A DNA stretch of 64,000 bases from Heptranchias perlo (taxonomy: Eukaryota). This document shows positions 21,365 to 53,149 of the stretch, piece by piece. Numbering within the stretch: the first letter of the stretch is position 1; every line of letters starts with the position of its first letter. Position numbers and translations under genes: made by a program. The notes under the pieces are model-generated. The model did not search any database, had not been told where the DNA came from, and saw only the letters and a list, made by a program, of their open reading frames with translations. The stretch lies in contig NW_027139653.1 of assembly GCF_035084215.1 (NCBI RefSeq), positions 1 through 64,000 on the forward strand, written 5' to 3'.

Positions 21365-21416
21365 ATGCTGCTTGTTACTTTACTGAACGTTTACTGTGTG
21401 CCCAACGTCTCCTCTG
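21365..21416 (+). CDS. MHC class I signal-peptide (leader) exon, copy 1
   Basis: ACAACATG context, in-frame TGA 12 nt upstream, encodes MLLVTLLNVYCVPNVSS plus G, donor G|GTAAGC. Phase 1 joins the alpha1 exon in frame (G+AT = Asp, then FH). Confidence 0.8.
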
Positions 21417-22159
21417 GTAAGCAAATCAAACAGCTTCTATCTGTGGACAGTATTTGAGGGGACACCGAGATTGAACCCATCTTCCATCACAAGATGCTCT
21501 CGAGCGGCCCCTGGGTTTGGACTATCTCATTGCCTTGGGTGTGTGAGCGATTCAGGTTAAGGATGATCCCTGTTCTGGGGAGGGGTCACTGGGGGAGGTT
21601 GTGTCACTGATCTGTTTGCCAAGTGTTTGTTCGAGGCACTTTTCTTCAATTATTGTCAAGGCTCACAGACAAATAACAGCCATTTTGGGGGTGAGGTATT
21701 AGAGCAGTACCTTGGAAGCAGTGGAAGGGAAGGGGATGGAGGGAATGGGAAGGGACAGGAAAGAAAAGGAAGGGAAAGGGAAGGGAAGGAATCGGAAAGG
21801 AAGGGAAAGGGAATGGAAGGGGAGGGAAGGAAAATCCTTTCCCTCGGATGGTGTTTCAAGAAGGATTCCATTATCCCCTTTCACATAACGGGCTAGATTG
21901 TGGTTTTAGCTCCGAGACATTAGGCATCACCTGGGCTGAGTTCAGAACGGAAATCTGGCCGGGCGGGGGGGTGATTTCAATAGAAGGAAAATGCTCCAGG
22001 TTCTGTTCCTGCCGTGTGATCCTCCTCTCCAGATTTTGCTCTCTCTCTGCTCCGCCCTGTTGATGCTGAACACCCAGGTGGTAAAGGTGAAAATCGACCT
22101 CAATATTACTGGACCACAGACACGTGTGAACCTTTCAGAGATTGTGTTCTGATCGATGT

Positions 22160-22450
22160 GTTCTGCCTCCTCCCTCTCACCCCCATCCCTTGTTCGTGCC
22201 AAAACCCCATCGGCTCCTCCAACTCCACAGAATTGACTCGAAGGTTCATTTCTTCACCTTTAAAGCCCTCTCTGTCCTCCTCCCTTCCCACCTCCGCAAT
22301 CTCCCCCAATCTCATGCCCCCACATGCCCCCTCCGCTCCTCCCACACCGGCCTAACCTCTCCTTCTCCACTGCCTCTGTTCCACCACTGAGAGCCGATCC
22401 TTCAGTCTCTCCTGTCCCTGCCCTCTCCAGCAATCTCCCTCAGGATTCCT
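22160..22450 (+). mobile_element. Highly decayed L2-like 3' fragment at the unit junction (repeated in copies 2-4)
   Basis: Translation HRIDSKVHFFTFKAL..PSHL..PLRSSHTGL resembles the L2 ORF2 C-terminus (RIDFKILLLTFKAL..LRSS..GLL). Confidence 0.55.
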
Positions 22451-24190
22451 GCCTTGTCCCTTCCCGGCCTCTCCACTGTTCCTGAATCAACTCCTGAGTG
22501 TGATTCTGGCTCCTCTTAAATCCTCTCTTTGGGCTCCTCCCTCCTGCTCTGTGCTCTGAGGCGTCTCCCTGTACACGAGGGCTGCTGTAGTAATGTAAGC
22601 TGCTGCACACAGTCAAAGCATCTCATCGGAACATAGGAACAGGAGGAGGCCATTCAGCCCCTCAAGCCTGTTCCGCCATTCAATTAGATCATGGCTGATC
22701 TGTTTCTTAACTCCACCCACCCGCCTTGGTGCCATATCCCATAATAACCTTGCCTAACAAAAATCGATCAATCTCAGTTGTGAAATTTTCAATTGACCCC
22801 CAGCCTCAACAGCATTTTGGGGAAAGAGAGTTCCAGATTTCCACTCCCCTTTGTGTGAAGAAACGCTTCCTGACATCACCCCTGAACGGCCTGGCTCTAA
22901 TTTTAAGGTGACGGCCCCTTGTTCTGGACTCTCCCACCAGAGGAAATAGTTTCTCTCTATCTACCCAATCAGATCCTTCAATGATCTTAATTACAGCACC
23001 CGTTAATCTTCTGCACTCAAGGGAATACAAGCCTGGTCTGTGCAACCTGTCCTCATAATTTAACCCTTTCAGCCCCCGGTATGAAAGTACTTCTCATAAT
23101 GAATGGCGTTTCCCACATTACAACAGTGATGACACTTTCACATTACTTCACTTTCTGTGAAGCGCTTTGGGACATCCTGAGGTTGTGAAAGGTGATGTAT
23201 AAAAAGATCTTTTGTTCTTTCCGAACCTTCTTGTGCTGCTTCAGCAGGGTGACACTGAAATCGAAGCAGATTCGAAGCCTGTCCCCCCGTTCCCACCTTC
23301 ACCTCACAGCAACACAATGGACTTTGGACTGTCCGATGTCCGATGTGTTGCTCAGGCCCACGACTGACTTTTATTTCTGAGCAAACACTGCCCGTTTATT
23401 ATAGTCTCTGAGCGGGTCAAGGCCAAAGTGAACTCTGTATGTCCGATTGTGGGGAGAATGAGCTGCTGACTCTTCAATAATCAACTGGTGCTCGAGGAAA
23501 AAATACTCACAGTGATGTTGATCTGGGTGAATTAGAATAAATTGGCATCGAAGCAAATTCACAGACAGATTTTTATGTTCATTTTCAATGCACCGTCTTC
23601 GAGTCGCGCTTAACATGAGGCTCCTCAGAACAGCAACCCATGAGGATAACAGAACATTGAACAATGTCACCAAATCCAGTCAGTGGACGTCATGCTCAAA
23701 CTGAGGGGGAGGGGGAAAGGGAGGGAGAGGGATAGTGGGAGGGAGGGGCAGGGAGGGGGTGGGAGGGGGATGGAGGAGGAGAGGGCGATGGAGAGGGAGA
23801 AGGGGAGAGGGCGAAGGAGATGGGGTGGGAGTTGGGTTTGGGAGGAGAGGGAGAGGGAAAGAGCGAGAGAGAGGGGGAGAGAGAGGGAGTGGGGAGAGGA
23901 GGGATTGGGAGAGGGAGAGGTGATGGGGAATAGGATGGAGTGGCAGAGGGTGAGCGGGAGCGAGAGGGAGGCAGATGGGGAGGGTCAGAGAAGGAGAGCA
24001 AGAGGGAGACGTGGATGAGGGAGTGTGTGAGTGGAGGGAGAGGGGGAGTCGGACAAAGAGAGGGAGAGGAAGGGGAAGAGGACAAGGGAGATGAGGAGGG
24101 GGAAGAAGAGGGGACTGAGAGGGAGAGGGTGGGAGAGGGAGAGAGGGATGGTGGGAGGGAGAGATAGACGAGGAGGGGGCGGGAGAGGGA

Positions 24191-27100
24191 GAACATAAGA
24201 ACATAAGAACATAAGAAATAGGAGCAGGAGTCGGCCAATCGGCCCCTCGAGCCTGTTCCGCCATTCAATAATTTCATGGCTGATCTGATCCTAACCTCAA
24301 ATCTAAATTCATGTCCAATTTCCTGCCCGCTCCCCGTAACCCCTAATTCCCTTTACTTCTAGCAAACTGTCTATTTCTGTTTTAAATTTATTTAATGATG
24401 TTGCTTCCACAGCTTCCTGGGGCAGCAAATTCCACAGACCTACTACCCTCTGAGTGAAGAAGTTTCTCCTCATCTCAGTTTTGAAAGAGCAGCCCCTTAT
24501 TCTAAGATTATGCCCCCTAGTTCTAGTTTCACCCATCCTTGGGAACATCCTTACCGCATCCACCCGATCAAGCCCCTTCACAATCTTATATATTTCAATA
24601 AGATCGCCTCTCATTCTTCTGAACTCCAATGAGTAGAGTCCCAATCTGCTCAACCTCTCCTCATATGTCCACCCCCTCATCCCCGGGATTAACCGAGTGA
24701 ACCTTCTTTGTACTGCCTCGAGAGCAAGTATGTCTTTTCTTCAGTATGGAGACCAAAACTGTATGCAGTATTCCAGGTGCGGTCTCAGCAATACCTTATA
24801 TAACTGCAGCAATACCTCCCTGTTTTTATATTCTATCCCCCTAGCAATAAAAGCCAACATTCCGTTGGCCTTCTTGATCACCTGCTGCACCTGCAAACTA
24901 ACCTTTTGATTTTCTTGCACTAGGACCCCCAAATCCCTTTGTACTGCAGTACTTTCCAGTTTCTCGCCATTAAGATAATAACTTGCTCTCCGATTTTTCC
25001 TGCCAAAGTGCATAACCTCACATTTTCCAATATTGTATTGCATCTGCCAAATCTCCGCCCACTCACCCAGCCTGTCTATATCCCCTTGTCGGTTTTTTAT
25101 GTCCTCCTCACTCTCTACTTTCCCTCCCATCTTTGTATCATCTGCAAACTTTGATATGTTACACTCGGTCCCCTCCTCCAAATCGTTAATATAGATTGTA
25201 AAGAGTTGGGGACCCAGCACCGACCCCTGCGGAACACCACTGGCTACAGGTTGCCAGTCCGAGAATGTACCATTTATCCCAACTCTCTGCTTCCTGTTAG
25301 ATAACCAATCCTCCACCCATGCCAGAATATTACCCCCAATCCAGTGATTCTTTATCTTGAGCAATAATCTTTTATGTGGCACCTTGTCGAATGCCTTCTG
25401 AAAGTCCAAATACACTACGTCCACTGGTTCCCCTTTATCCACCCTGTACGTTATATCCTCAAAGAACTCAAGCAAATTTGTCAGACATGACTTCCCCTTC
25501 GTAAAGCCATGCTGACTTTGTCCTATTAAATTATGTTTATCCAAATGTTCTGCTATTGTCTCCTTAATAATAGACTCCAAAACTTTACCCACCACAGATG
25601 TTAAGCTAACTGGTCTATAATTTCCAGCCTTCTGCCTACTACCCTTTTTAAATAACGGTGTAACATTGGCAGTTTTCCAATCTGCCGGGACCTTTGCCGA
25701 GTCCAGAAAATTTTGGAAAATTATTACCAAAGCATCCACAATCCCTACTGCCACTTCCCTCAAGACCCTAGGATGTAAGCCATCAGGTCCAGGGGATTTA
25801 TCCGCCTTGAGTCCCATTAATTTACTGAGTACCAATTCCTTAGTGATTTTAATCGTATTTAGCTCCTCCCCCCAGAGCCCCCTGTTTGTCCAGTGTTGGG
25901 ATATTCTTAGTGTCCTCTACTGTAAAGACTGAAACAAAATATTTGTTCAGCATTTTTGCCATGTCCATGTTTCCCACCATTAATTTCCCGGTCTCATCCT
26001 CCAAAGGACCTACGTTTGCCTTAGCCACCCTTTTTCTTTTTATATAACTGTAGAAACTCTTGCTATCTGTTTTTATATTTTTTGCTAATTTATTTTCATA
26101 ATCTATCTTCCCTTTCTTAATCAATCCTTTTGTTACTTTTTGCTGTCTTTTGAAGACTTCCCAATCTTCTATCCTCCCACTAAGTTTGGCTACCTTATAT
26201 GTCCTTGTTTTTCGTCGGATACTATCCTTAATTTCTTTACTTAGCCATGGATGGCTGTCATTTCTTTGAAACCCTTTTTTCCTCAGTGGAATATATATTT
26301 TTTGAAAGTTGTAAAATAACTCCTTAAATGAACACCACTGCTCATGTACCGTCTTACCCTTTAATCTATTTTCCCAGTCCACTTTAATCAATTCCGCTCT
26401 CATACCATCATAGTCTCCTTTATTCAAGCTCAGTACGCTTGTTTGAGAACCAACCTTCTCACCCTCTAATTGGATATGGAATGTAACCATGTTATGGTCA
26501 CTCATTCCAAGGGGATCCTTAACTAGGACATTATTAATTAATCCTGGCTCATTACACAGGACCAGGTCCAAGGTTGCTTGCTCCCTTGTTGGTTCAGTTA
26601 CATACTGCTCAAGAAATCCATCCCTAATACACTCAATAAACTCTTCCTCAAGGCTACCCTGCCCAATTTGATTTGTCCAGTTAATATGATAGTTAAAATC
26701 CCCCCAAATTATAGCTGTTCCCTTATTACATGCCCCGACTATTTCCTGATTAATACTTCTTCCAGCAGAGTTGCAACTATTAGGAGGCCTATATACTATG
26801 CCCACGAGTGTTTTTTGCCCCTTATTATTCCTTATCTCTCCCCAAACTGTTTCATTATCCTGATCCTTTGTCCCAATATCTTTTGTCTGTGTTACAGTGA
26901 TTCCTTCCCTTATTAACATAGCCACCCCACCTCCCCTTCCTTCCTGCCTGTCCTTCCTGATTGTTAAATACCCTGGCATATTTAATTCCCAGTCGTTGTC
27001 ACCCTGCAGCCATGTTTCTGTAATGGCCACAAGATCAGACCCATACGTCGTTATTTGTGCCGTTAACTCGTCCATTTTGTTACGAATGCTACGTGCATTC

Positions 27101-27807
27101 AGATAAAGAACTTTCAAATATGTTTTGTGACACTTAGTTCCTGCTTTTTCCTTTTTTAACACTTTACCTTTTACTCCATACCTTCTGTCCCTTCCTGATA
27201 TGCTTTCCTCTGTCTCCCTGCTCAGGTTCCTAACCCCCTGCCACAGCTTTGATGCTGGGTTCATCGCCTTCCGCCATCTAGTTTTTATTTTATCTGTCGT
27301 GCCTAAAGTGCCTAAAGTACACTTTCTTTCCGCTGCTCGATGCTTTTCCCTTTCACTTGTTCTTGAACAACTGTTTGTACTATTTGTATTGTAAATTTCC
27401 CCTGGGTCTTCCCCTCTCTTGCTGCTCTCAACTTTATTCCCTTCTGACTCCCCACTCAGGTTCCCATCCCCCTGCCACTCTAGTTTAAACCTTCCCCAAC
27501 AGCACGAGCAAACACCCCCGCGAGGACATTTGTCCCGGTCCTGCTCGGGTGTAAACCGTCACGCTTGTACAGGTCCCACCTTCCCCAGAACCGGTCCCAA
27601 TGTCCCAGGAATCTAAATCCCTCCCTCCTACACCATCCCTGCAGCCACGCATTCATCCTGTCTATTCTCCTGTTCCTATACTCACTAGCACGTGGCACCG
27701 GTAGTAATCCTGAGATCACTACCTTTGAAGTCCTGCTTTTTAATTTATCTCCTAACTCCTGAAATTCACCTTGCAGGACCTCATCCCTTTTTTTACCTAT
27801 GTCGTTG
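24191..27807 (-). mobile_element. CR1 LINE, 5'-truncated in ORF1, complete but disrupted ORF2 (copy A)
   Basis: APE endonuclease (LYLNARS, ITETWL, GDFN, LDLV, SDH), RT (YLDFQKAFDKV, GVPQGSVLGP, FADD), ORF1 esterase-like end (NDIG..DGLHP), (CTTATGTT)n tail. One-base frameshift in the C6 run at 25868-25873 and in-frame TGA at 24741. Confidence 0.97.
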
Positions 27808-28351
27808 TGGGGAGATTATCTGGTCATGATCTTGTTGCTGTTTGTGGGATCTTGCTGTGTGCAAATTGGCTGCCGTGTTTCCTACATTAAAACAGTGACT
27901 ACACTTCACTAATACTTCACTGTCTGTAAAACTCTTTGGGAGGTCCTGAGGTGGTGAAATCACAATAGGAATGTGAGTCTCTCTTTTCTTTGTGGTCCCA
28001 TTGCCAGTGAGAGTCGGTGCATTGGGAAGAGAATGGGAGGGGTGAAAGTGGGAGTCTGGAATAGACCATTGAAATACAGGGGGTGTAACCAGATGCGATG
28101 GTTCGGTGTTAATACTGGGCTGGGCCTCAGTGTGAACCCCTGCTGTAAGATGCAGGCTCAGACTCCACTCCCTGGGACCCAGTGACCAGAACAAGTCCCT
28201 CCATTCTAACTGGATCTGGTTATCAGACCTGCTGCACACAAGCACCAATAAGTAGCTTCAGACTCGAGTGGTGTTGAAAAGCGCAAGAGATTAAGTTCCT
28301 GTTACAGCAGCTTCTCTCCTGGTTAATCAGCGCCTCGGGTGACTTTACAAC

Positions 28352-28403
28352 ATGCTGCTTGTTACTTTACTGAACGTTTACTGTGTGCCCAACGTCTCCT
28401 CTG
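28352..28403 (+). CDS. MHC class I leader exon, copy 2 (identical to copy 1)
   Basis: Same 52-nt ATG..TCTG followed by GTAAGC. Confidence 0.8.
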
Positions 28404-31171
28404 GTAAGCAAATCAAACAGCTTCTATCTGTGGACAGTATTTGAGGGGACACCGAGATTGAACCCATCTTCCATCACAAGATGCTCTCGAGCGGCCCCTG
28501 GGTTTGGACTATCTCATTGCCTTGGGTGTGTGAGAGATTCAGGTTAAGGATGATCCCTGTTCTGGGGAGGGGTCACTGGGAGAGGTTGTGTCACTGATCT
28601 GTTTGCAAAGTGTTTGATCGAGGCACTTTTCTTCAATTATTGTCAAGGCTCACAGACAAATAACAGCCATTTTGGGGGGTGAGGTATTAGAGCTGTACCT
28701 CGGAAGCAGTGGAAGGGAAGGGGATGGAGGGAATGGGAAGGGACAGGAAAGAAAAAGAAGGGAAAGGGAAGGGAAGGAATCGGAAAGGAAGGGAAAGGGA
28801 ATGGAAGGGGAGGGAAGGAAAATCCTTTCCCTCGGATGGTGTTTGAAGGAGGATTCCATTATCCCCTTTCACATAACGGGCTCGATTGTGGTTTTAGCTC
28901 CGAGACATTAGGCATCACCTGGGCTGAGTTCAGAACGGAAATCTGGCCGGGCGGGGGATTTCAATGGATGGAAAATGCTCCAGGTTCTGTTCCTGCCGTG
29001 TGATCCTCCTCTCCAGATTTTGCTCTCTCTCTGCCCCGCCCAGTTGATGCTGAACACCCAGGTGGTAAAGGTGAAAATCGACCTCAATATTACTGGACCA
29101 CAGACACGTGTGAACCTTTCAGAGATTGTGTTCTGATCGATGTGTTCTGCCTCCTCCCTCTCACCCCCATCCCTTGTTCGTGCCAAAACCCCATCGGCTC
29201 CTCCAACTCCACAGAATTGACTCGAAGGTTCATTTCTTCACCTTTAAAGCCCTCTCTGTCCTCCTCCCTTCCCACCTCTGCAATCTCCCCCAATCTCATG
29301 CCCCCACATGCCCCCTCCGCTCCTCCCACACCGGCCTAACCTCTCCTTCTCCACTGCCTCTGTTCCACCACTGGGAGCCGATCCTTCAGTCTCTCCTGTC
29401 CCTGCCCTCTCCAGCAATCTCCCTCAGGATTCCTGCCTTGTCCCTTCCCGGCCTCTCCACTGTTCCTGAATCAACTCCTGAGTGTGATTCTGGCTCCTCT
29501 TAAATCCTCTCTTTGGGCTCCTCCCTCCTGCTCTGTGCTCTGAGGCGTCTCCCTGTACACGAGGGCTGCTGTAGTAATGTAAGCTGCTGCACACAGTCAA
29601 AGCATCTCATCGGAACATGGGAACAGGAGGAGGCCATTCAGCCCCTCAAGCCTGTTCCGCCATTCAATTAGATCATGGCTGATCTGTTTCTTAACTCCAC
29701 CCACCCGCCTTGCCATATCCCATAATAACCTTGCCCAACAAAAATCGATCAATCTCAGTTGTGAAATTTTCAATTGACCCCCAGCCTCAACAGCATTTTG
29801 GGGAAAGAGAGTTCCAGATTTCCACTCCCCTTTGTGTGAAGAAACGCTTCCTGACATCACCCCTGAACGGCCTGGCTCTAATTTTAAGGTGACGCCCCCT
29901 TGTTCTGGACTCTCCCACCAGAGGAAATAGTTTCTCTCTATCGACAATATCAAATCCTTCAATGATCTTAATTACAGCACCTGTTAATCTTCGACACTCA
30001 AGGGAATACAAGCCTCGTCTGTGCAACCTGTCCTCATAATTTAACCCTTTCAGCCCCCGGTATGAAAGTACTTCTCATAATGAATGGCGTTTCCCACATT
30101 ACAACAGTGATGACACTTTCACATTACTTCACTTTCTGTGAAGCGCTTTGGGACATCCTGAGGTTGTGAAAGGTGATGTATAAAAAGATCTTTTGTTCTT
30201 TCCGAACCTTCTTGTGCTGCTTCAGCAGGGTGACACTGAAATCGAAGCAGATTCGAAGCCTGTCCCCCCGTTCCCACGTTCACCTCACAGCAACACAATG
30301 GACTTTGGACTGTCCGATGTCCGATGTGTTGCTCAGGCCCACGACTGACTTTTATTTCTGAGCAAACACTGCCCGTTTATTATAGTCTCTGAGCGGGTCA
30401 AGGCCAAAGTGAACTCTGTATGTCCGATTGTGGGGAGAATGAGCTGCTGACTCTTCAATAATCAACTGGTGCTCGAGGAAAAAATACTCACAGTGATGTT
30501 GATCTGGGTGAATTAGAATAAATTGGCATCGAAGCAAATTCACAGACAGATTTTTATGTTCATTTTCAATGCACCGTCTTCGAGTCGCGCTTAACATGAG
30601 GCTCCTCAGAACAGCAACCCATGAGGATAACAGAACATTGAACAATGTCACCAAATCCAGTCAGTGGACGTCATGCTCAAACTGAGGGGGAGGGGGAAAG
30701 GGAGGGAGAGGGATAGTGGGAGGGAGGGGCAGGGAGGGGGTGGGAGGGGGATGGAGGAGGAGAGGGCGATGGAGAGGGAGAAGGGGAGAGGGCGAAGGAG
30801 ATGGGGTGGGAGTTGGGTTTGGGAGGAGAGGGAGAGGGAAAGAGCGAGAGAGAGGGGGAGAGAGAGGGAGTGGGGAGAGGAGGGATTGGGAGCGGGAGAG
30901 GTGATGGGGAATAGGATGGAGTGGCAGAGGGTGAGCGGGAGCGAGAGGGAGGCAGATGGGGAGGGTCAGAGAAGGAGAGCAAGAGGGAGACGTGGATGAG
31001 GGAGTGTGTGAGTGGAGGGAGAGGGGGAGTCGGACAAAGAGAGGGAGAGGAAGGGGAAGAGGACAAGGGAGATGAGGAGGGGGAAGAAGAGGGGACTGAG
31101 AGGGAGAGGGTGGGAGAGGGAGAGAGGGATGGTGGGAGGGAGAGATAGACGAGGAGGGGGCGGGAGAGGGA

Positions 31172-34100
31172 GAACATAAGAACATAAGAACATAAGAAAT
31201 AGGAGCAGGAGTCGGCCAATCGGCCCCTCGAGCCTGTTCCGCCATTCAATAATTTCATGGCTGATCTGATCCTAACCTCAAATCTAAATTCATGTCCAAT
31301 TTCCTGCCCGCTCCCCGTAACCCCTAATTCCCTTTACTTCTAGCAAACTGTCTATTTCTGTTTTAAATTTATTTAATGATGTTGCTTCCACAGCTTCCTG
31401 GGGCAGCAAATTCCACAGACCTACTACCCTCTGAGTGAAGAAGTTTCTCCTCATCTCAGTTTTGAAAGAGCAGCCCCTTATTCTAAGATTATGCCCCCTA
31501 GTTCTAGTTTCACCCATCCTTGGGAACATCCTTACCGCATCCACCCGATCAAGCCCCTTCACAATCTTATATATTTCAATAAGATCGCCTCTCATTCTTC
31601 TGAACTCCAATGAGTAGAGTCCCAATCTGCTCAACCTCTCCTCATATGTCCACCCCCTCATCCCCGGGATTAACCGAGTGAACCTTCTTTGTACTGCCTC
31701 GAGAGCAAGTATGTCTTTTCTTCAGTATGGAGACCAAAACTGTATGCAGTATTCCAGGTGCGGTCTCACCAATACCCTATATAACTGCAGCAATACCTCC
31801 CTGTTTTTATATTCTATCCCCCTAGCAATAAAAGCCAACATTCCGTTGGCCTTCTTGATCACCTGCTGCACCTGCAAACTAACCTTTTGATTTTCTTGCA
31901 CTAGGACCCCCAAATCCCTTTGTACTGCAGTACTTTCCAGTTTCTCGCCATTAAGATAATAACTTGCTCTCCGATTTTTCCTGCCAAAGTGCATAACCTC
32001 ACATTTTCCAATATTGTATTGCATCTGCCAAATCTCCGCCCACTCACCCAGCCTGTCTATATCCCCTTGTCGGTTTTTTATGTCCTCCTCACTCTCTACT
32101 TTCCCTCCCATCTTTGTATCATCTGCAAACTTTGATATGTTACACTCGGTCCCCTCCTCCAAATCGTTAATATAGATTGTAAAGAGTTGGGGACCCAGCA
32201 CCGACCCCTGCGGAACACCACTGGCTACAGGTTGCCAGTCCGAGAATGTACCATTTATCCCAACTCTCTGCTTCCTGTTAGATAACCAATCCTCCACCCA
32301 TGCCAGAATATTACCCCCAATCCAGTGATTCTTTATCTTGAGCAATAATCTTTTATGTGGTACCTTGTCGAATGCCTTCTGAAAGTCCAAATACACTACG
32401 TCCACTGGTTCCCCTTTATCCACCCTATACGTTATATCCTCAAAGAACTCAAGCAAATTTGTCAGACATGACTTCCCCTTCGTAAAGCCATGCTGACTTT
32501 GTCCTATTAAATTATGTTTATCCAAATGTTCTGCTATTGTCTCCTTAATAATAGACTCCAAAACTTTACCCACCACAGATGTTAAGCTAACTGGTCTATA
32601 ATTTCCAGCCTTCTGCCTACTACCCTTTTTAAATAACGGTGTAACATTGGCAGTTTTCCAATCTGCCGGGACCTTTGCCGAGTCCAGAAAATTTTGGAAA
32701 ATTATTACCAAAGCATCCACAATCCCTACTGCCACTTCCCTCAAGACCCTAGGATGTAAGCCATCAGGTCCAGGGGATTTATCCGCCTTGAGTCCCATTA
32801 ATTTACTGAGTACCAATTCCTTAGTGATTTTAATCGTATTTAGCTCCTCCCCCCAGAGCCCCCTGTTTGTCCAGTGTTGGGATATTCTTAGTGTCCTCTA
32901 CTGTAAAGACTGAAACAAAATATTTGTTCAGCATTTTTGCCATGTCCATGTTTCCCACCATTAATTTCCCGGTCTCATCCTCCAAAGGACCTACGTTTGC
33001 CTTAGCCACCCTTTTTCTTTTTATATAACTGTAGAAACTCTTGCTATCTGTTTTTATATTTTTTGCTAATTTATTTTCATAATCTATCTTCCCTTTCTTA
33101 ATCAATCCTTTTGTTACCTTTTGCTGTCTTTTGAAGACTTCCCAATCTTCTATCCTCCCACTAAGTTTGGCTACCTTATATGTCCTTGTTTTTCGTCGGA
33201 TACTATCCTTAATTTCTTTACTTAGCCATGGATGGCTGTCATTTCTTTGAAACCCTTTTTTCCTCAGTGGAATATATATTTTTTGAAAGTTGTAAAATAA
33301 CTCCTTAAATGAACACCACTGCTCATGTACCGTCTTACCCTTTAATCTATTTTCCCAGTCCACTTTAATCAATTCCGCTCTCATACCATCATAGTCTCCT
33401 TTATTCAAGCTCAGTACGCTTGTTTGAGAACCAACCTTCTCACCCTCTAATTGGATATGGAATGTAACCATGTTATGGTCACTCATTCCAAGGGGATCCT
33501 TAACTAGGACATTATTAATTAATCCTGGCTCATTACACAGGACCAGGTCCAAGGTTGCTTGCTCCCTTGTTGGTTCAGTTACATACTGCTCAAGAAATCC
33601 ATCCCTAATACACTCAATAAACTCTTCCTCAAGGCTACCCTGCCCAATTTGATTTGTCCAGTTAATATGATAGTTAAAATCCCCCCAAATTATAGCTGTT
33701 CCCTTATTACATGCCCCGACTATTTCCTGATTAATACTTCTTCCAGCAGAGTTGCAACTATTAGGAGGCCTATATACTATGCCCACGAGTGTTTTTTGCC
33801 CCTTATTATTCCTTATCTCTCCCCAAACTGTTTCATTATCCTGATCCTTTGTCCCAATATCTTTTGTCTGTGTTACAGTGATTCCTTCCCTTATTAACAT
33901 AGCCACCCCACCTCCCCTTCCTTCCTGCCTGTCCTTCCTGATTGTTAAATACCCTGGCATATTTAATTCCCAGTCGTTGTCACCCTGCAGCCATGTTTCT
34001 GTAATGGCCACAAGATCAGACCCATACGTCGTTATTTGTGCCGTTAACTCGTCCATTTTGTTACGAATGCTACGTGCATTCAGATAAAGAACTTTCAAAT

Positions 34101-35155: not shown

Positions 35156-35166
35156 CGTCTCCTCTG
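35156..35166 (+). pseudogene. Remnant of leader exon, copy 3 (ATG and proximal promoter removed by a 218-bp deletion)
   Basis: CCACTCCCTG is joined directly to CGTCTCCTCTG|GTAAGC; equivalent to loss of 28175-28392 in copy 2. Confidence 0.8.
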
Positions 35167-41554: not shown

Positions 41555-42098
41555 TGGGGAGATTATCTGGTCATGATCTTGTTGCTGTTTGTGGGATCTT
41601 GCTGTGTGCAAATTGGCTGCCGTGTTTCCTACATTAAAACAGTGACTACACTTCACTAATACTTCACTGTCTGTAAAACTCTTTGGGAGGTCCTGAGGTG
41701 GTGAAATCACAATAGGAATGTGAGTCTCTCTTTTCTTTGTGGTCCCATTGCCAGTGAGAGTCGGTGCATTGGGAAGAGAATGGGAGGGGTGAAAGTGGGA
41801 GTCTGGAATAGACCATTGAAATACAGGGGGTGTAACCAGATGCGATGGTTCGGTGTTAATACTGGGCTGGGCCTCAGTGTGAACCCCTGCTGTAAGATGC
41901 AGGCTCAGACTCCACTCCCTGGGACCCAGTGACCAGAACAAGTCCCTCCATTCTAACTGGATCTGGTTATCAGACCTGCTGCACACAAGCACCAATAAGT
42001 AGCTTCAGACTCGAGTGGTGTTGAAAAGCACAAGAGATTAAGTTACTGTTACAGCAGCTTCTCTCCTGGTTAATCAGCGCCTCGGGTGACTTTACAAC

Positions 42099-42150
42099 AT
42101 GCTGCTTGTTACTTTACTGAACGTTTACTGTGTGCCCAACGTCTCCTCTG
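42099..42150 (+). CDS. MHC class I leader exon, copy 4 (closest intact leader, 10.7 kb from alpha1)
   Basis: Identical 52-nt exon with GTAAGC donor at 42151. Confidence 0.82.
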
Positions 42151-45100
42151 GTAAGCAAATCAAACAGCTTCTATCTGTGGACAGTATTTGAGGGGACACC
42201 GAGATTGAACCCATCTTCATCACAAGATGCTCTCGAGCGGCCCCTGGGTTTGGACTATCTCATTGCCTTGGGTGTGTGAGAGATTCAGGTTAAGGATGAT
42301 CCCTGTTCTGGGGAGGGGTCACTGGGAGAGGTTGTGTCACTGATCTGTTTGCAAAGTGTTTGTTTGAGGCACTTTTCTTCAATTATTGTCAAGGCTCACA
42401 GACAAATAACAGCCATTTGGGGGGTGAGGTATTAGAGCTGTACCTCGGAAGCAGTGGAAGGGAAGGGGATGGAGGGAATGGGAAGGGACAGGAAAGAAAA
42501 GGAAGGGAAAGGGAAGGGAAGGAATCAGAAAGGAAGGGAAAGGGAATGGAAGGGGAGGGAAGGAAAACCCTTTCCCTCGGATGGTGTTTGAAGGAGGATT
42601 CCATTATCCCCTTTCACATAACGGGCTCGATTGTGGTTTTAGCTCCGAGACATTAGGCATCACCTGGGCTGAGTTCAGAACGGAAATCTGGCCGGGCGGG
42701 GGGGATTTCAATGGATGGAAAATGCTCCAGGTTCTGTTCCTGCCGTGTGATCCTCCTCTCCAGATTTTGCTCTCTCTCTGCCCCGCCCAGTTGATGCTGA
42801 ACACCCAGGTGGTAAAGGTGAAAATCGACCTCAATATTACTGGACCACAGACACGTGTGAACCTTTCAGAGATTGTGTTCTGATCGATGTGTTCTGCCTC
42901 CTCCCTCTCACCCCCATCCCTTGTTCGTGCCAAAACCCCATCAGCTCCTCCAACTCCACAGAATTGACTCGAAGGTTCATTTCTTCACCTTTAAAGCCCT
43001 CTCTGTCCTCCTCCCTTCCCACCTCCGCAATCTCCCCCAATCTCATGCCCCCACATGCCCCCTCCGCTCCTCCCACACCGGCCTAACCTCTCCTTCTCCA
43101 CTGCCTCTGTTCCACCACTGAGAGCCGATCCTTCAGTCTCTCCTGTCCCTGCCCTCTCCAGCAATCTCCCTCAGGATTCCTGCCTTGTCCCTTCCCGGCC
43201 TCTCCACTGTTCCTGAATCAACTTCTGTCCGTGATTCTGGCTCCTCTTAAATCCTCTCTTTGGGCTCCTCCCTCCTGCTCTGTGCTCTGAGGCGTCTCCC
43301 TGCACACGAGGGCTGCTGGAGTAATGTAAGCTGCTGCACACAGTCAAAGCATCTCATCGGAACATGGGAACAGGACGAGGCCATTCAGCCCCTCAAGCCT
43401 GTTCCGCCATTCAATTAGATCATGGCCGACCTGTTTCTTAACACCACCCACCCGCATTGTTGCCATATCCCATAATAACCTTGCCGAACAAAAATCGATC
43501 AATCTCAGTTGTGAAATTTTCAATTGACCCCCAGCCTCAACAGCATTTTGGGGGAGAGAGTTCCAGATTTCCACTCCCCTTTGTGTGAAGAAACGCTTCC
43601 TGACATCACCCCTGAACGGCCTGGCTCTAATTTTAAGGTGACGCCCCCTTGTTCTGGACTCTCCCACCGGAGGAAATAGTTTCTCTCTATCTACCCTATC
43701 AGATCCTTCAATGATCTTAATTACAGCACCCGTTAATCTTCTGCACTCAAGGGAATACAAGCCTGGTCTGTGCAACCTGTCCTCATAATTTAACCCTTTC
43801 AGCCCCCGGTATGAAAGTACTTCTCATAATGAATGGCGTTTCCGACATTACAACAGTGATGACACTTTCACATTACTTCACTTTCTGTGAAGCGCTTTGG
43901 GACATCCTGAGGTTGTGAAAGGTGATGTATAAAAAGATCTTTTGTTCTTTCCGAACCTTCTTGTGCTGCTTCAGCAGGGTGACACTGAAATCGAAGCAGA
44001 TTCGAAGCCTGCCCCCCCGTTCCCACCTTCACCTCACAGCAACACAATGGACTTTGGACTGTCCGATGTCCGATGTGTTGCTCAGGCCCACGACTGACTT
44101 TTATTTCTGAGCAAACACTGCCCGTTTATTATAGTCTCTGAGCGGGTCAAGGCCAAAGTGAACTCTGTGTGTCCGATTGTGGGGAGAATGAGCTGCTGAC
44201 TCTTCAATAATCAACTGGTGCTCGAGGCAAAAATACTCACAGTGATGTTGATCTGGGTGAATTAGAATAAATTGGCATCGAAGCAAATTCACAGACAGAT
44301 TTTTATGTTAATTTTCAATGCACCGTCTTCGAGTCGCGCTTAACATGAGGCTCCTCAGAACAGCAATCCATGAGGATAACAGAACATTGAACAATGTCAC
44401 CAAATCCAGTCAGTGGACGTCATGCTCAAACTGAGGGGGAGGGGGAAAGGGAGGGAGAGGGATAGTGGGAGGGAGATGGAGAGGGAGAAGGGGAGGGGGA
44501 GTCGGAGGGAGAGTGGGAGGCAGAGGCTGAGGGGGAGGGGAGGGAGTGTGAAGGGGAGGGAGAGTGGAGGGGAGGGAGAGGCTGGGGGAGCTAGAGGGAG
44601 AGAGGGAGGGTGATGGGGAAGGGACAGAGAAGGGGAGCGAGAGGGAGAGGTGCGGGAGGGTGTGTGAGTGAAGAGAGAGGGTAAAGGTGGGGAGATGGGG
44701 AAGGAGAGGGGGAGTCAGACAAAGAGAGGGAGAGGAAAGGGAAGAGGACAAGGCAGATGGGGAGGGGGAGGGAGAGGGAGAGAATCGGAGAGGGAGAGAG
44801 GGATGGTGGGAGGGAGAGGTGGACGAGGAGGGGGAGGGGAGGGGGAGGGAGAGGGTGGGAGAGGGAAAGAGGGATTGTGGGAGGGAGAGGGGGATGAGGA
44901 GGGGGAGCGGAGGGAGAGGGAGTTTGGAGATTATCTGGTCATTATCTTGTTGCTGTTTGTGGGATCTTGCTGTGCGCAAATTGGCTGCCGTGTTTCCTAC
45001 ATTAAAACCGTGACGACACTTCACTAATACTTCACTGTCTGTAAAACTCTTTGGGAGGTCCTGAGGTGGTGAAATCACAATAGGAATGTGAGTCTCTCTT

Positions 45101-45636
45101 TTCTTTGTGGTCCCATTGCCAGTGAGAGTCGGTGCATTGGGAAGAGAATGGGAGGGGTGAAAGTGGGAGTCTGGAATAGACCATTGAAATACAGGGGGTG
45201 TAAACAGATGCGATGGTTCGGTGTTAATACTGGGCTGGGCCTCAGTGTGAACCCCTGCTGTAAGATGCAGGCTCAGACTCCACTCCCTGGGACCCAGTGA
45301 CCAGAACAAGTCCCTCCATTCTAACTGGATCTGGTTATCAGACGTGCTGCACACAAGCACCAATAAGTAGCTTCAGACTCGAGTGGTGTTGAAAACGCAA
45401 GAGATTAAGTTACTGTTACAGCAGCTTCTCTCCTGGTTAATCCGTGTCCATGACTGACATTTATTTCTGGTCAAACACTGCCTGTTTATTGTAGTCTCTG
45501 AGCACGTCAAAGCCAAGGTGAACTCTAAGGGGTCGATTTTAACCCCATGAACGGGTGGGTTTGGGTGCAGGTGGGAAGGTAAAAATTGTAAAAATCTAAA
45601 ACCCGCCTTCAAACCGACCACTTCCGGTTTTAACGG

Positions 45637-48600
45637 CATAGAACCATACAAAAGATACAGCACAGAAGGGGGCTATTCGGCCCATCGTGTCCGTGCCAGC
45701 TCGAAGAACAACCAGGTGCCCATTCTCATCCCACCTTCCAGCACCCGGTCCGTAGCCCTGCAGCTTACAGCACTTTAGATGCAGGTCCAGGTACTTTTTA
45801 AAAGAGTTGAGGGCCCCTGCCTCGACCACCAATTCAGGCAGCGAATTCCATACACCCACCACCCTCTGGGTAAAAGAGTTTTTCCTCATGTCCCCTCTAA
45901 TCCTTCCGCCAATCAGCTCAAATCTATGTCCTCTAGTTCTTGAACTCTCCGCTAGGGGAAACAGGTACTTCCTGTCTACTCTATCTGGGCCCCTCATAAT
46001 TTTGTACACCTCAATCAAGTCTCCCCTCAGCCTCCTCTGCTCCAAGGAAAACAACCCCAGCCTATCCAATCTCTCCTCGTAGCTGCAATTTTCAAGCCCT
46101 GGCAACATTCTTGTAAATCTTCTCTGCACTCTCTCCAGAGCAATTACGTCCTTCCTGTAATGTTGTCACCAGAACTGCGCACAATACTTCAGCTGTGGCC
46201 TTACCAGCGTTTTATACAGTTCCACATTACATCCCTGCTTTTGTATTCTATGCCTCTGCTAATAACGGAGGGCATTCCGTATGCCTTCTTCACAACCTTA
46301 TCTACCTGTACTGCCACCTTCAGGGACCTGTGCACATGCACTCCAAGGTCTCTCACTTCCTCTACCCCTCTCAATATATTCCCGTTTACTGCGTATTCCC
46401 TTTTACTGTTTGCCCTCCCTAAGTGCATTACCTCACACTTCTCCAGGTTGAACTCCATTTGCCACTTTTCCGCCCACTCCACCAACCCATTGATATCTTC
46501 TTGGAGTCTACAGCTATCCTCTTCACTGTCAACTACACGGACAATTTTTGTCGTCAATAAATTTGCCAATCATGCCCCCTACATTCAAGTCCAAATCATT
46601 AATATATACCACAAACAGCAAGGGACCCAACACTGAGCCTTGTGGCACACCACTGGAAACGGATTTCCATTCGCAAAGACATCCATCGACTTTTACCATT
46701 TGTTTCCTGTTACTGAGCCAATTTTGGATCCAATTCACCACATTTCCCTGTATCCCATGGGCTTTTACCTTTCTGACCAGTCTGCCATGTGGGACCTTGT
46801 CAAATGCCTTAATAAAATCCATGTAGACATCACTCTCATCAATCCTCCTTGTCACTTCCTCAAAGAATTTAATCAGATTTGTAAGGCATGACCTTCCCTG
46901 AACAAATCCATGCTGACTACCCCTGATTAAACCATGCCTTTCCAAGTGACAGTTTATCCTATCTCTCAGTATTGATTCTAATAGTTTGCCCACCACCGAG
47001 GTAAGACTGACCGGCCCATAATTGTTCGGCCTTTCCCTCGTACCCTTTTTAAAACAACAGTACTATGTTTGCAGTCTTACAGTCCTCCGGTACCTCCCCT
47101 GTATCTCGTGAGGATTGGAAAATGATCCTCAGCACATCCGCTATTTCCTCCCTGGCTTCCTTCAATAGCCTCGGAAACAATCCATCCGGCCCTGGTGACT
47201 TATCAACTTTCAAGGATTCCAGTCCCTCTAGTACTTCCTCTCTCGTTATGTTTACCTTATCCAATATTTCACACCTTTCCTCTTTAACTACTACGTCCGG
47301 ATCATCCCTTTCCCTTATGAATACGAAGACAAAATATTCATTTAAAACTCTACCCACATCCTCTGCTTCTACACACAAGTTACCCTTATCGTCCCTGATA
47401 GGTCCCATCTTTTCCTCAGCTATCCTCTTGTTCTTAATGTACTGATAAAACATCTTTGGGTTTTCTTTAATCTTACTCGTTAATATTTTTTCCTGCCCTC
47501 TCTTTGCTTTCCTTATTTCCTTTTTTACGTCATCCCTGTACTTTCTATACTCCTCCAGGCTTTCTGCAGTATTTAGTTTTCTGTGACAGTCATAAGCTTT
47601 CTTTTTCTGCTTTATCTTGCCCCGTATACTTCTAGACAACCAGGGGGCTCTAAATTTGGCAGTGCCACCCATTTCCTTTGAGGGGACGTGTCTGCATTGT
47701 ACCCGTAGAATTTCACTTTTGAGTGCCTCCCACTGGCTTGCCACTGATTTCTCCTCAAGTAGTTGTGTCCAGTCCACTTCTGCCAAATCACCTCTTGGTT
47801 CTGTAAAATTTGCCTTCCCCCAATTTAAAATGTTTACTCCTGATTTAACACTGTCCTTTTCCATAATAATGCTAAAACTAACTGAATTGTGGTCACTATC
47901 CCCATTATGGTCACCCACTGTCACTTCACCCACTTGCCCATCTTCATTTCCCAGGACTAAATCTAGAATGGCATCCCCTCTTGTTGGGCTTGTCACGTAT
48001 TGGCTAAAAAAGTTCTCCTGGACACCGATCAAGAATTTTGCGCCCTCTGTGCCCCTCACACTGTTTGAATCCCAGTTGATGTTAGGTTAGTTGAAGTCCC
48101 CTACTATTATTGCCCTCTTATTTTTGCACTCAGAAATTTGCCTACATATTTGTTCTTCTATCTCCCTTTCGCTATTCGGGGGTCGAGAGTACACTCCTAG
48201 TAGTGTGACTGCCCCTTTTTTATACCTTAGCTCAACCCATACGGCCTCGATTGATGATCCATTTAGCATATCATCCCTTCTCACAACTCTAATTGATTAT
48301 TTAACCAATAATGCTGCCCCCCTCCTTTTATATCACCCACTCTATCCTGCTTGAACACTCAATATCCAGGGATATTGAGCTGCCAATTATCCCCCTCTTT
48401 AAGCCAGGTTTCCATTATAGCAATGATATCATGCTGCCACGTGTCCATCTGTGCCCTTACATTGAAGTATATACCCTTTAACCCCGTCAAATTCCTGTGC
48501 TGAACACTATTTAACCTTTGCTTTTTTGCATTTCTGAGTTGCTAACTACGTCACTAACTGCTTTTCTACTTTGCGTTTCCTGGTCTGAATTTGTCCTGTC

Positions 48601-48950
48601 TGTACCTGCCCTTTGGTTCCCATCCCCCACCATACTAGTTTAAACCCTCCCCAACACAACTAGCAAATGTCCCCACGAGGATACTGGTCCCGGTTCTGCT
48701 TGGGTGCAATCCTTTCATCTTGTACAGGTCCCGCCTTTCCCAGAATCGGTCTCAATGCCTCAGGAATTTAAACCCCTCCCTCCTACACCATCTCTCAAGC
48801 CACGCATTCATCTGGTCTATTCTCCTATTTCTGCTCTCGCTGGCATGTGGCACTGGGAGTAATCCTGAGATTACTACCTCAGAGGTCCTGCTTTTTAATT
48901 TATTTCCTATCTCCCGATATTCTGCTTGCAGGACCTCATCCGTTTTTTTT
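45637..48950 (-). mobile_element. CR1 LINE of a different subfamily, 5'-truncated in ORF1, multiple frameshifts
   Basis: Endonuclease (GDFN, ILDLVLGN, DSDHN) and RT (YMDFIKAFDKVPH, GVPQGSVLGP) fragments in colinear order; ORF1 end at about 48640-48945. Confidence 0.94.
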
Positions 48951-51160: not shown

Positions 51161-51214
51161 TCTGTACCAATGAAAAGAATCCCAGTCTGTTCTCATAACT
51201 CAAGCCTCTCATCG

Positions 51215-51860: not shown

Positions 51861-51976
51861 GTCCACCAGATTCCCTGGGATCGCCCGAGCAAATCTCTTC
51901 CCGACCTTCTCCGTGAACTTGACATCCTCTTCAACACATGGTATCCAAAATCGGACGCAACGTCCTCACTGTGGCC

Positions 51977-52800
51977 TAATATGGGAAAATGTGAAGTCAT
52001 CCACTTTGGGAGGAAAAATAAAAAAGCAAAATATTATTTGAATGGAGAAATAATACAAAATGCTGCGGTAAAGAGGGATCTGGGTGTCCTCCTACATGAA
52101 ACACAAAAAGTCAACATACAGGTGCAGCAGGTAATCCGGAAGGCAAACGGAGTATTGGCCTTTATTTCTAGGGGGATGGAGTATAAAAGCAGGGAAGTCA
52201 TGCTACAACTGTACAGGGTGCTGGTGAGACCACACCTGGAGCACTGCGTACAGTTCTGGTGACCTTATTTAAGGAAGGACATACTTGCATTGGAGGCAGT
52301 TCAGAGAAGGTTCACGAGGTTGATTCCGGGTATGGAAGGGTTGTCTTATGAGGAAAGATTGAACAGGTTGGGTCTATACTCATTGGAGTTTTGAAGAATG
52401 AGAGGAGATCTTATGAAAAATACAAGATTCTGAGGGGACTCGATAGGGTAGATGCTGAGAGGACGTTACCCCTCATGGGGGAATCTAAAACTAGGGGGCA
52501 TAGTCTCAGAATAAGGGGTCGCCCGTTTAAGACGGAAATGAGGAGGAATTTCTTCTCCCAGAGGGTTGTGAATGTTTGGAATTCTTTATCCCAAAAAGCT
52601 GTGAAGGCTGAGTCATTGAATACATTCAAGGCTGAGTTAGACAAATTTTTGATCAGCAAGGGAGTCAAACGATATGGGTAAAGGGCGGGAAAGTGGAGTT
52701 GAGGTAAAAACCAGATCAGCCATGATCTCATTGAATGGCGGAGCAGGCTCGAGGGGCTGAATGGCCTACTCCTGCTGCTATCTCTTATGGTCTTATGGTC
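51977..52800 (+). mobile_element. CR1 3' fragment ending about 90 bp upstream of the alpha1 acceptor
   Basis: KCEVIHFGRKN..RDLGV..LVRPHLE..FFSQRVVNVWNSL; TCTTATGG tail. Confidence 0.93.
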
Positions 52801-52888
52801 TAACCAGGCTGAGCATTAGCCGTTTCCACTTTGAGTTACTTATGATTAACGTCATTTTTGAGACTGGTTTCTGTCTGTGATCCTGCAG

Positions 52889-53149
52889 ATTTCCACATCC
52901 TCGCATTTTACTACATACTGAGCCGTGGCGGGGCCGAGATGCCCGAGTACAGCTTGGTCGCGATGCTCGATGACTATGAGATAGTGTATTTCGACAGCAC
53001 CCTGCAGCGGACTGTGCCCAGACAGCAGTGGATGGCCGACTCCTTCGACAACCATCACTGGGACGCCATCGCCATCACAATGGCGGGGTTCCATGGTCTG
53101 GTCAGAGGAAACGCCGAGATATTTTACCGACAGCAACACAGTGCCTCGA
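52889..53149 (+). CDS. MHC class I heavy chain (nonclassical), alpha1 domain exon
   Basis: CTGCAG acceptor, A|GTGAGT donor, 261 nt, phase 1/1; (D)FHILAFYY..PEY..LDD..YFDS..VPRQQWM..HWD matches class I alpha1 motifs (H3, D29, FDS, PRxxW, W60). Confidence 0.95.

What the first reader, a model, noticed from the sequence alone, without database searches (positions are those of the whole stretch)
21365..53149. Tandem array of promoter plus signal-peptide exon cassettes upstream of a single MHC class I gene body
Seen: a 52-nt exon-like sequence (good ATG context, in-frame stop upstream, MLLVTLLNVYCVPNVSS, phase 1 GTAAGC donor) occurs intact and identical at 21365, 28352 and 42099, once per duplicated unit. 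No alpha1-3 exons lie inside the units, and I found no other leader candidate before alpha1 at 52889. Established: class I genes begin with a phase 1 leader exon, and class I expansion normally duplicates whole genes. Inference: only the 5' module was amplified here, giving up to three alternative first exons (introns of about 31.5, 24.5 and 10.7 kb) that encode the same protein. This could act as a promoter-dosage or promoter-choice system and may vary in copy number. The exon is too short to appear in the ORF track.
Basis: partly seen in the sequence, partly recalled or inferred. Interest (0 to 1): 0.85.

Follow-up and report, generated by a model that had tools for sequence, protein, structure and literature searches.

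The report
Duplicated leader-exon cassettes before shark MHC gene
A very recent tandem duplication has copied the start (upstream region plus signal-peptide exon) of a sevengill-shark nonclassical MHC class I gene several times; the exon is the gene's real first exon, but the extra copies look like ordinary, partly decaying structural variation, not a regulatory device.

Summary
The 52-nt exon encoding MLLVTLLNVYCVPNVSS, followed by GTAAGC, is identical at 21365, 28352 and 42099. Alpha1-3 exons are single-copy, with none inside the repeat units.

The splice inference is supported, but it is already annotated. RefSeq XP_067836932.1 of Heptranchias perlo (P0225) contains all three window exon translations exactly and begins with this leader joined to DFHILAFYY. 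The Pristiophorus japonicus ortholog has 16 of 17 leader residues. One contig, most likely RNA, ends exactly at the donor at 42150.

The array is larger and messier than described:
- There are five upstream-region copies.
- One has a 218-bp deletion that removes the ATG.
- One is cut off about 30 nt before the ATG.
- Three units carry a 3.6-kb LINE.
- Units are 99.3-99.6% alike, with mosaic differences.

The leader's perfect identity is not significant, because only about 1.2 changes are expected. Nothing shows promoter dosage or promoter choice. The family is also multi-copy as whole genes in this species (11 proteins, at least 7 scaffolds).

My best reading is neutral, recent unequal crossing-over. 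The scan noted a similar two-cassette case on another piece of this genome (s1-883333), which I did not test.

The parts
19127..20822 (+). X0: a partial, older copy of the 1.7-kb 'X' segment (LINE 3' fragment, SINE-like piece, GA-rich tract) that also ends every unit. It lies directly before unit 1.
   Evidence: Self-BLAST gives 88-94% identity to 22424-24136, 29408-30880, 36171-37883 and 43155-44865. MAFFT gives 91.7-95.3%.
20823..27809 (+). Unit u1 (6,987 nt): SINE-like start, about 350 nt of unique upstream DNA, leader, about 1 kb of intron, X, and a LINE.
   Evidence: u1 vs u2 is 99.30% overall, but 97.6% in the upstream region and 99.83% in the LINE (a mosaic).
21365..21416 (+). Leader exon copy 1 (MLLVTLLNVYCVPNVSS plus the first base of the next codon; donor GTAAGC).
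24198..27809 (-). CR1-like LINE inside u1. The same element lies at about 31179-34790 in u2 and about 37945-41556 in u3. It is absent from u4 and X0.
   Evidence: Pfam hits RVT_1 (106 bits), Exo_endo_phos (41 bits) and Lipase_GDSL_2 (37 bits) on minus-strand ORFs. Extent.
27810..34790 (+). Unit u2 (6,981 nt).
28352..28403 (+). Leader exon copy 2.
34791..41556 (+). Unit u3 (6,766 nt). A 218-bp deletion at 35155/35156 removes about -177 to +41, that is the proximal upstream region, the ATG and most of the leader.
   Evidence: 28393-35155 aligns to 35156-41921 at 99.5%.
35156..35166 (+). Remnant of the leader in u3: its last 11 nt, followed by an intact GTAAGC donor. It has no ATG.
41557..44925 (+). 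Unit u4 (3,369 nt, the short form without the LINE). It holds the intact cassette nearest to alpha1.
   Evidence: The upstream region is 99.6% identical to u2, and the second half of X is 91%.
42099..42150 (+). Leader exon copy 3. It lies 10,738 nt upstream of alpha1.
   Evidence: The contig of run X1 lies on 42062-42150 and ends at the donor.
44926..45448 (+). Unit u5: the upstream region only, 98.3% identical to u2 and u4. It diverges about 30 nt before where the ATG would be and has no leader.
45599..48949 (-). A second, more diverged LINE of the same kind, lying in the intron between u5 and alpha1.
   Evidence: RVT_1 hit of 81.8 bits. Its 5' part is 82.7% identical to the unit LINE. ORFs.
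52889..53149 (+). Alpha1 exon (261 nt, phase 1 at both ends; acceptor ...ctgcag|ATTTCCAC).
58015..58290 (+). Alpha2 exon (276 nt).
   Evidence: Pfam MHC_I at 66.4 bits. Boundaries read against P0225.
60812..61084 (+). Alpha3 exon (273 nt, C1-set). The transmembrane exon was not found in the window.
   Evidence: Pfam C1-set at 59.9 bits. Boundaries. No TM match.

Best explanation
The window comes from Heptranchias perlo and holds one gene of a conserved elasmobranch nonclassical MHC class I lineage. Its first coding exon is the 52-nt leader, which is spliced across a long, transposon-filled intron to alpha1.

The 5' end of the gene (about 540 nt upstream, the leader and the first part of intron 1) sits in a head-to-tail array. 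The array was made by unequal crossing-over between repeats: the 1.7-kb X segment and the GA-rich and SINE-like tracts at the unit borders.

The inferred history is:
1. A 3.4-kb unit was duplicated.
2. One copy took up a 3.6-kb LINE.
3. The resulting 7-kb unit was triplicated very recently, with exchange between copies.
4. One copy then lost its ATG through a 218-bp deletion. The copy nearest the gene body lacks the leader altogether.

All intact copies encode the same signal peptide, so whichever is used, the protein is the same. I take the array to be neutral structural variation in an unstable region that is rich in repeats and paralogs. Most likely the nearest intact cassette (42099) serves the gene, and the others are redundant or silent.

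What is shown: the anatomy, the leader-alpha1 link at the family level, and the decay of two copies. What is inferred: the duplication mechanism, the order of events, the neutrality, and which cassette is used.
For: Leader and gene:
- P0225 (XP_067836932.1, H. perlo) is the only 1 of 11 cluster members that holds the alpha1, alpha2 and alpha3 translations of the window exactly, and it starts with the leader joined to DFHILAFYY.
- 5 of 11 members carry the same leader.
- P. japonicus P0146 and P0156 have 16 of 17 and 15 of 17 identical leader residues.
- The X1 contig of 1,438 nt lies on 42062-42150 only and ends at the donor. The unique parts of the unit have zero depth.

Array:
- Periods are 6,987, 6,981, 6,766 and 3,369 nt.
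- Unit identities are 99.30-99.57%.
- Identity is mosaic by segment. For example, u1/u2 is 97.6% in the upstream region but 99.83% in the LINE, while u2, u3 and u4 are 99.6-100% in the upstream region.
- X0 flanks the array on the left.
- The LINE is present in u1-u3 only.

Decay: the 218-bp deletion in u3 and the truncation of u5.

No excess conservation: 0 changes in 52 nt against about 1.2 expected from the flanks (u1/u2 show 23 substitutions in 1,041 nt).
Against: - No read evidence assigns transcription to any particular cassette.
- The only spliced contig has one mismatch to all three copies, so it may come from a paralogous locus.
- Three intact, identical cassettes, together with a scan note of a similar duplication on another piece of the genome (s1-883333, untested), leave room for a recurrent and possibly useful arrangement.
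- Neutrality is inferred from the lack of evidence for selection. It is not demonstrated.
- The array rests on one assembly of a 124.6-kb unplaced scaffold and was not checked against raw DNA reads.
Confidence: 0.6

Rival explanations
1. This is a working multi-promoter system. Two or three cassettes each fire and splice to the same alpha1, raising output (dosage) or allowing a choice of promoter. Copy number would vary between haplotypes as an expression polymorphism.
For: - Three cassettes are intact, with identical ATG context, leader and donor.
- The upstream regions of u2 and u4 differ by only 2 of 542 nt.
- The leader is a real, used exon.
- A scan note reports a two-cassette duplication at another locus of this genome (title only, untested).
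Against: - 2 of the 5 upstream copies are broken.
- The copies are so recent (0.4-0.7% divergence) that being intact needs no selection.
- The leader's identity is not significant.
- The 542 nt upstream hold no exact ISRE, NF-kB, TATA, CRE or GAS consensus, only a CCAAT at -107 (motifs recalled from memory).
- Only 1 of 4 runs gave a leader contig, and it cannot be assigned to a copy.
- Reading the sequence directly: if an upstream transcript used the AG at about -47 or -44 of a downstream cassette as an acceptor, the in-frame TGA would end the protein (inference).
Confidence: 0.12
2. The array is an assembly artefact. Near-identical paralogs or haplotypes of this multi-copy family were strung together or over-expanded on a small unplaced scaffold.
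For: - The matching RefSeq protein sits on a scaffold of only 124,624 bp, and very similar genes lie on at least 6 other scaffolds of 76-530 kb.
- The units are 99.3-99.6% alike.
- The window is full of long minisatellites.
Against: - The units are not identical. They differ by 29-49 substitutions per pair, several indels, one 218-bp deletion and a LINE presence/absence, in a coherent mosaic.
- All unit junctions are clean and alike.
- A 7-kb period is shorter than usual HiFi reads (recalled, not checked for this assembly).
Confidence: 0.13
3. The cassettes are stumps of former whole class I genes whose alpha1-TM bodies were deleted, so the array records gene death rather than amplification of the 5' module.
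For: Whole-gene copies of this lineage are numerous in the species, and 5 of 11 RefSeq models lack the leader (4 start MPEYSLV, 1 starts MAGFHG). A sixth, P0226, is a partial model that starts FHILAFYY. This shows that 5' ends and gene bodies are often uncoupled.
Against: - There is no trace of alpha exons in the units.
- The junctions u1/u2, u2/u3 and u3/u4 are the same (LINE 5' end to unit start), so the present unit was copied as a unit.
- The short unit (X plus upstream, leader and intron) is flanked by X on both sides, as unequal crossing-over predicts.
Confidence: 0.08

Closest known systems
RefSeq gene model XP_067836932.1, 'major histocompatibility complex class I-related gene protein-like, partial' (Heptranchias perlo), and its 10 cluster mates
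   Same: It has the same leader, the same leader-alpha1 junction, and alpha1-3 translations identical to the window exons.
   Different: The protein record says nothing about the repeated cassettes.
Conserved elasmobranch nonclassical class I lineages (UDA, UFA and UGA are described as single- or low-copy; UBA and UEA as expanded)
   Same: There is one ortholog in each of 10 other shark and ray species at 54-72% identity to the skate protein used as query, which fits an old, usually single-copy MHC-Ib lineage. The lineage names come from passages of PMC10751288 and PMC12562908.
   Different: I could not assign the lineage name. The two J Immunol papers that define UDA and UEA are not held, and UFA and UGA are cited there as unpublished. 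In H. perlo the lineage is multi-copy, or is represented by several haplotigs.
Clusters of tandem alternative first exons with their own promoters (UGT1A, clustered protocadherins; recalled from general knowledge)
   Same: Tandem first exons in the same orientation, each with its own upstream region and donor, lie ahead of one set of shared downstream exons.
   Different: In those clusters the first exons differ and encode different protein parts, and the promoters are known to be chosen individually. Here the exons are identical and encode only the signal peptide, the copies are 0.4-4% diverged, two are broken, and promoter use is untested.
Partial (5'-end) tandem gene duplication by non-allelic homologous recombination between flanking repeats (general class of segmental duplication; recalled)
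   Same: The units are head-to-tail and highly identical. A direct repeat (X) lies at both ends of the basic unit. Differences between copies are mosaic, as unequal exchange or conversion would give. There is a transposon presence/absence difference between units.
   Different: Nothing essential. This is the class I file it under.

Membership tests
MHC class I gene | Alpha1/alpha2 peptide-binding superdomain (Pfam PF00129) | tested here: met
   The alpha2 exon frame scores 66.4 bits against a cut-off of 28.3. Alpha1 alone scores 27.1 bits, just under the cut-off. The full RefSeq relatives carry PF00129.
MHC class I gene | Membrane-proximal Ig C1-set alpha3 domain | tested here: met
   PF07654 scores 59.9 bits against a cut-off of 21.
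MHC class I gene | Separate short leader exon in phase 1 that encodes the signal peptide and is spliced to alpha1 | tested here: met
   The exon is 52 nt (17 codons plus 1 base), and alpha1 starts in phase 1. The RefSeq model P0225 has the junction VSS|DFHILAFYY. A contig ends at the donor. SignalP was not available, so the signal-peptide character rests on the hydrophobic core, on V at -3 and S at -1, and on conservation in P0146.
MHC class I gene | Transmembrane and cytoplasmic exons | tested here: inconclusive
   tblastn with P0148 and P0227 finds no TM or tail match in the window after 61116. The gene probably runs past the window's end, and the RefSeq model is itself 3'-partial.
Tandem segmental duplication by unequal crossing-over (NAHR) | Head-to-tail units of high identity with uniform junctions | tested here: met
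Tandem segmental duplication by unequal crossing-over (NAHR) | A direct repeat flanking the ancestral unit | tested here: met
   X0 (19127-20822) precedes u1, and X ends each unit.
Tandem segmental duplication by unequal crossing-over (NAHR) | The array is supported by raw long DNA reads and varies in copy number between haplotypes | not tested
Alternative-first-exon cluster (UGT1A / protocadherin type) | Each first exon has its own active promoter | not testable with these tools
   There are no TSS data. The only contig starts at -37 and cannot be assigned to a copy. The motif scan found only a CCAAT at -107.
Alternative-first-exon cluster (UGT1A / protocadherin type) | The first exons encode different protein segments | tested here: not met
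   The three exons are identical.

The most novel reading that the evidence does not exclude
In the sevengill shark, genes of this nonclassical class I family repeatedly gain and lose tandem promoter-plus-leader cassettes. This window has three intact and two broken cassettes, another piece of the genome is said to have two, and about half of the RefSeq models have no leader. Cassette number would then set how strongly, or whether, each paralog is expressed with a signal peptide. That would be a copy-number rheostat acting on the 5' end of the gene rather than on whole genes.
Probability: 0.1. Interest if true: 0.6.

Novelty: new member of a known kind. Interest (0 to 1): 0.3.

Why it matters
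There are three practical points.

1. The leader of this old elasmobranch class I lineage lies 10 kb or more upstream of alpha1. It seems to be missed in most species' annotations, whose N-termini are not signal peptides. The Heptranchias and Pristiophorus leader gives a probe to correct them.

2. The window shows how fast the 5' ends of MHC paralogs are reshuffled in a shark genome. Duplication, LINE insertion, exchange between copies, deletion and truncation all occur within a few per cent of divergence.

3. Mature mRNAs from the three cassettes may not be distinguishable, because all SNPs that separate the copies lie at -54 or further upstream while the known transcript starts at -37 or further upstream.

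If the cassettes all proved active, this would be an unusual way to tune a class I gene. Nothing here shows that.

Tried and rejected
- The repeat finder on the whole window returned only the 57-bp minisatellite. I replaced it with a self-BLAST.
- A closer leader candidate in 45440-52889 was rejected: 0 of 66 phase-1 ATG...GT candidates match the leader's scores. The scan is crude, and its donor matrix uses recalled frequencies.
- A leader remnant behind the LINE that follows u5 was rejected. Sensitive BLAST of 45449-52888 against the array finds only transposon similarities, plus a 78-92-nt X-like piece at 45449-45540.
- Selection on the leader was rejected as not significant.
- Classical class I promoter motifs were not found. 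The motifs were recalled and matched only as exact consensus, so this is a weak negative.
- The lineage name (UDA, UFA or UGA) could not be settled.
- In print: three searches (and, for the lineage, 38 and 41) gave no paper describing a tandem array of class I promoter and leader cassettes. In one search no listed paper held 'leader exon' at all. I saw only search listings and abstract starts, and passages of PMC10751288 and PMC12562908.
- The search of earlier findings by sequence was blank.
- In one search the loose-end letters of the key contig were not among the rows shown. The junction to alpha1 is therefore not read directly from RNA. It rests on the RefSeq model and on the contig's exact end at the donor.
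- The exact count is 5 of 11, corrected in entry 3.
Exons were searched one at a time, and the joined form was seen only in proteins that the tools returned.
- SignalP was not available.


Full report
**Observation**

The 11-mer that starts the exon occurs three times, at 21365, 28352 and 42099 (0.09 expected by chance). Reading the three places shows an identical 52-nt exon (ATG...TCCTCTG), a GTAAGC donor, A at -3 and an in-frame TGA upstream. The introns to alpha1 (52889) would be 31,472, 24,485 and 10,738 nt.

**Gene body**

- Alpha1 is 52889-53149, alpha2 is 58015-58290 and alpha3 is 60812-61084. All are in phase 1.
- Pfam gives MHC_I at 66.4 bits for alpha2 and 27.1 bits for alpha1 alone (cut-off 28.3), and C1-set at 59.9 bits for alpha3.
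- tblastn with the three exon frames finds them once each and finds nothing in the repeat units.
- The transmembrane exon is not in the window.

**Is the 52-nt exon this gene's leader?**

A phmmer search with the alpha1 exon alone against 1.84 billion representatives gave a skate protein as best hit (P0001, 69% identity). A search with that returned protein found one relative in each of 10 other elasmobranch species (two further, shorter hits come from Pristiophorus and Leucoraja). It also found a Heptranchias perlo cluster of 11 distinct RefSeq proteins on at least 7 scaffolds.

By exact substring tests, only P0225 (XP_067836932.1, 281 aa, 3'-partial, on a 124,624-bp scaffold) contains all three window exon translations.

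- 5 of 11 members carry this leader.
- 4 start at an internal MPEYSLV.
- 1 starts at MAGFHG.
- 1 is partial and starts at FHILAFYY.

The sawshark (Pristiophorus japonicus) orthologs begin MLLVTLLNVYCVPTVSS and MLLITLLNVYCVPTVSS. The leader is therefore conserved between two orders.

Most other species' models have N-termini that do not look like signal peptides. P0151 starts MAFPLCDPS-DFHILAFYY, which resembles the in-frame intron read-through CDPA-DFHILAFYY seen in the window. This suggests that the distant leader is often missed in annotation.

A crude scan found no rival leader between 45440 and 52889 (0 of 66 candidates).

**RNA**

The best four (X1-X4) come from one sample of one organism and hold 15-26% of the sampled words.

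I laid them on 41000-46999. Depth was enormous over transposon pieces and zero over the unique parts of the unit, which is how RNA would look (an inference). In X1, a 1,438-nt contig (depth 31.7) lies on 42062-42150 only. It occupies the last 89 letters of the contig and has one other letter. It therefore covers 37 nt of 5' UTR plus the whole leader, and it leaves the stretch exactly at the predicted donor.

The remaining 1,349 nt fit the rest of an mRNA of this family. This is an inference, because the loose-end letters of this contig were not among the rows shown.

The three copies are identical over those 89 nt. The single mismatch therefore means the contig may come from a paralog. It does not reach the SNPs at -54 to -70 that separate the copies. 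X2-X4 showed no such contig, but contigs show presence, not absence.

**Anatomy of the array**

Self-BLAST and alignments give this layout:

| Element | Coordinates | Notes |
|---|---|---|
| X0 | 19127-20822 | partial copy of X, before u1 |
| u1 | 20823-27809 | long unit |
| u2 | 27810-34790 | long unit |
| u3 | 34791-41556 | long unit with a 218-bp deletion |
| u4 | 41557-44925 | short unit, no LINE |
| u5 | 44926-45448 | upstream region only |

- Each unit starts with a SINE-like piece. Positions 68-150 of the unit are 83% identical to a copy inside X.
- After that come about 350 nt of unique upstream DNA, the leader, about 1 kb of intron, and the 1.7-kb X segment (a LINE 3' fragment, a SINE-like piece and a GA-rich tract).
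- u1-u3 carry in addition a 3.6-kb CR1-like LINE on the minus strand, with hits to RVT_1, Exo_endo_phos and a GDSL-type ORF1.
- u3 has a 218-bp deletion that removes the proximal upstream region, the ATG and 41 nt of the leader. It leaves 11 nt of the leader plus the donor.
- u5 matches the upstream region at 98.3% and then diverges about 30 nt before the ATG. It runs into an X-like 78-92-nt piece and then a second, older LINE. No leader follows that LINE.

**History and selection**

- The long units are 99.30-99.57% alike. u4 is about 95.5-95.9% alike to them overall.
- Identity is mosaic. u1 differs from u2 by 2.4% in the upstream region but by 0.17% in the LINE. u2, u3 and u4 are 99.6-100% alike upstream. 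In the first half of X, u1 and u3 agree against u2. This pattern is what unequal crossing-over or conversion among units gives.
- The leader shows 0 changes in every pair. With 23 changes in 1,041 flanking nt between u1 and u2, only about 1.2 changes are expected in 52 nt (a chance of zero of about 0.3). Its identity therefore says nothing about selection (the arithmetic is mine).
- Two of the five upstream copies are broken.
- The upstream 542 nt hold a CCAAT at -107 but none of the other recalled class I promoter consensus motifs in exact form. 'Promoter' is thus a positional inference.

**Reading**

The leader-alpha1 link is real and already annotated. The array is real in this assembly. 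It is best explained as a recent tandem duplication of the gene's 5' end mediated by repeats, followed by a LINE insertion, further unequal exchange, one deletion and one truncation.

All intact cassettes give the same protein. I see no evidence for promoter dosage or choice, and some evidence for decay. The rivals are a working multi-promoter system, an assembly artefact, and stumps of dead genes. They are set out with their tests in the Rival explanations section.

The family is multi-copy as whole genes in this species. 'Only the 5' module was amplified' therefore holds for this window, not for the family.

**Known relatives**

Passages of PMC10751288 and PMC12562908 describe elasmobranch MHC-Ib lineages: UBA and UEA as expanded, and UDA, UFA and UGA as single- or low-copy. 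I could not assign this gene to one of them, because the defining papers are not held.

My searches found no paper describing a tandem array of class I leader cassettes. Only listings were seen.

The scan's own notes hold a first-reader title about a two-cassette duplication on another piece of this genome (s1-883333). I could not test it.

Noticed in passing
window 675-3006, 3143-13965; N run 269-505: There are two very long minisatellites upstream of the array: a 25-bp unit in 93 copies and a 57-bp unit in 190 copies (10.8 kb, 94% matches). An assembly gap lies just before them.
   Followed up: no
window 53473-54986 and 55136-55605: The alpha1-alpha2 intron holds a 33-bp minisatellite (46 copies) and a 17-bp minisatellite (28 copies). 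Their units look partly reverse-complementary to each other (GCAGCACT.../...AGTGCTGC type).
   Followed up: no
window 61295-63649: A 20-bp minisatellite (120 copies, 85% matches) starts 210 nt after the alpha3 exon. It creates a spurious 1,032-codon open frame. The RefSeq model is 3'-partial here, and no TM exon is found in the window.
   Followed up: partly
proteins P0144, P0149-P0152, P0154 (orthologs in other elasmobranchs): Their annotated N-termini are not signal-peptide-like. P0151 starts MAFPLCDPS before DFHILAFYY, resembling the intron read-through just upstream of alpha1 in this window. The true distant leader is probably missing from these models.
   Followed up: partly
H. perlo proteins P0148, P0221-P0230: There are 11 distinct proteins more than 90% alike on at least 7 scaffolds of 76-530 kb, with up to three on one scaffold. 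The lineage looks single-copy in the other species listed, but in the sevengill shark it is expanded or is represented by several haplotigs.
   Followed up: partly
window 24744-27558 (minus strand), repeated in u2 and u3: The LINE inside the units keeps long open frames of 391 and 569 codons. Its copies differ from each other by only 0.2-0.3%. It is a young CR1-like element that was copied passively with the unit.
   Followed up: partly
window 41604-41621 joined to 43379-43897 in RNA-like contigs: Many high-depth contigs join the SINE-like start of the unit to the SINE-like piece inside X. These are most likely transcripts or copies of the same repeat family from elsewhere, not splicing at this locus.
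   Followed up: partly
window 35156-35172: The u3 deletion leaves an orphan donor: 11 nt of the leader followed by GTAAGC, with no ATG and no proximal upstream region.
   Followed up: yes
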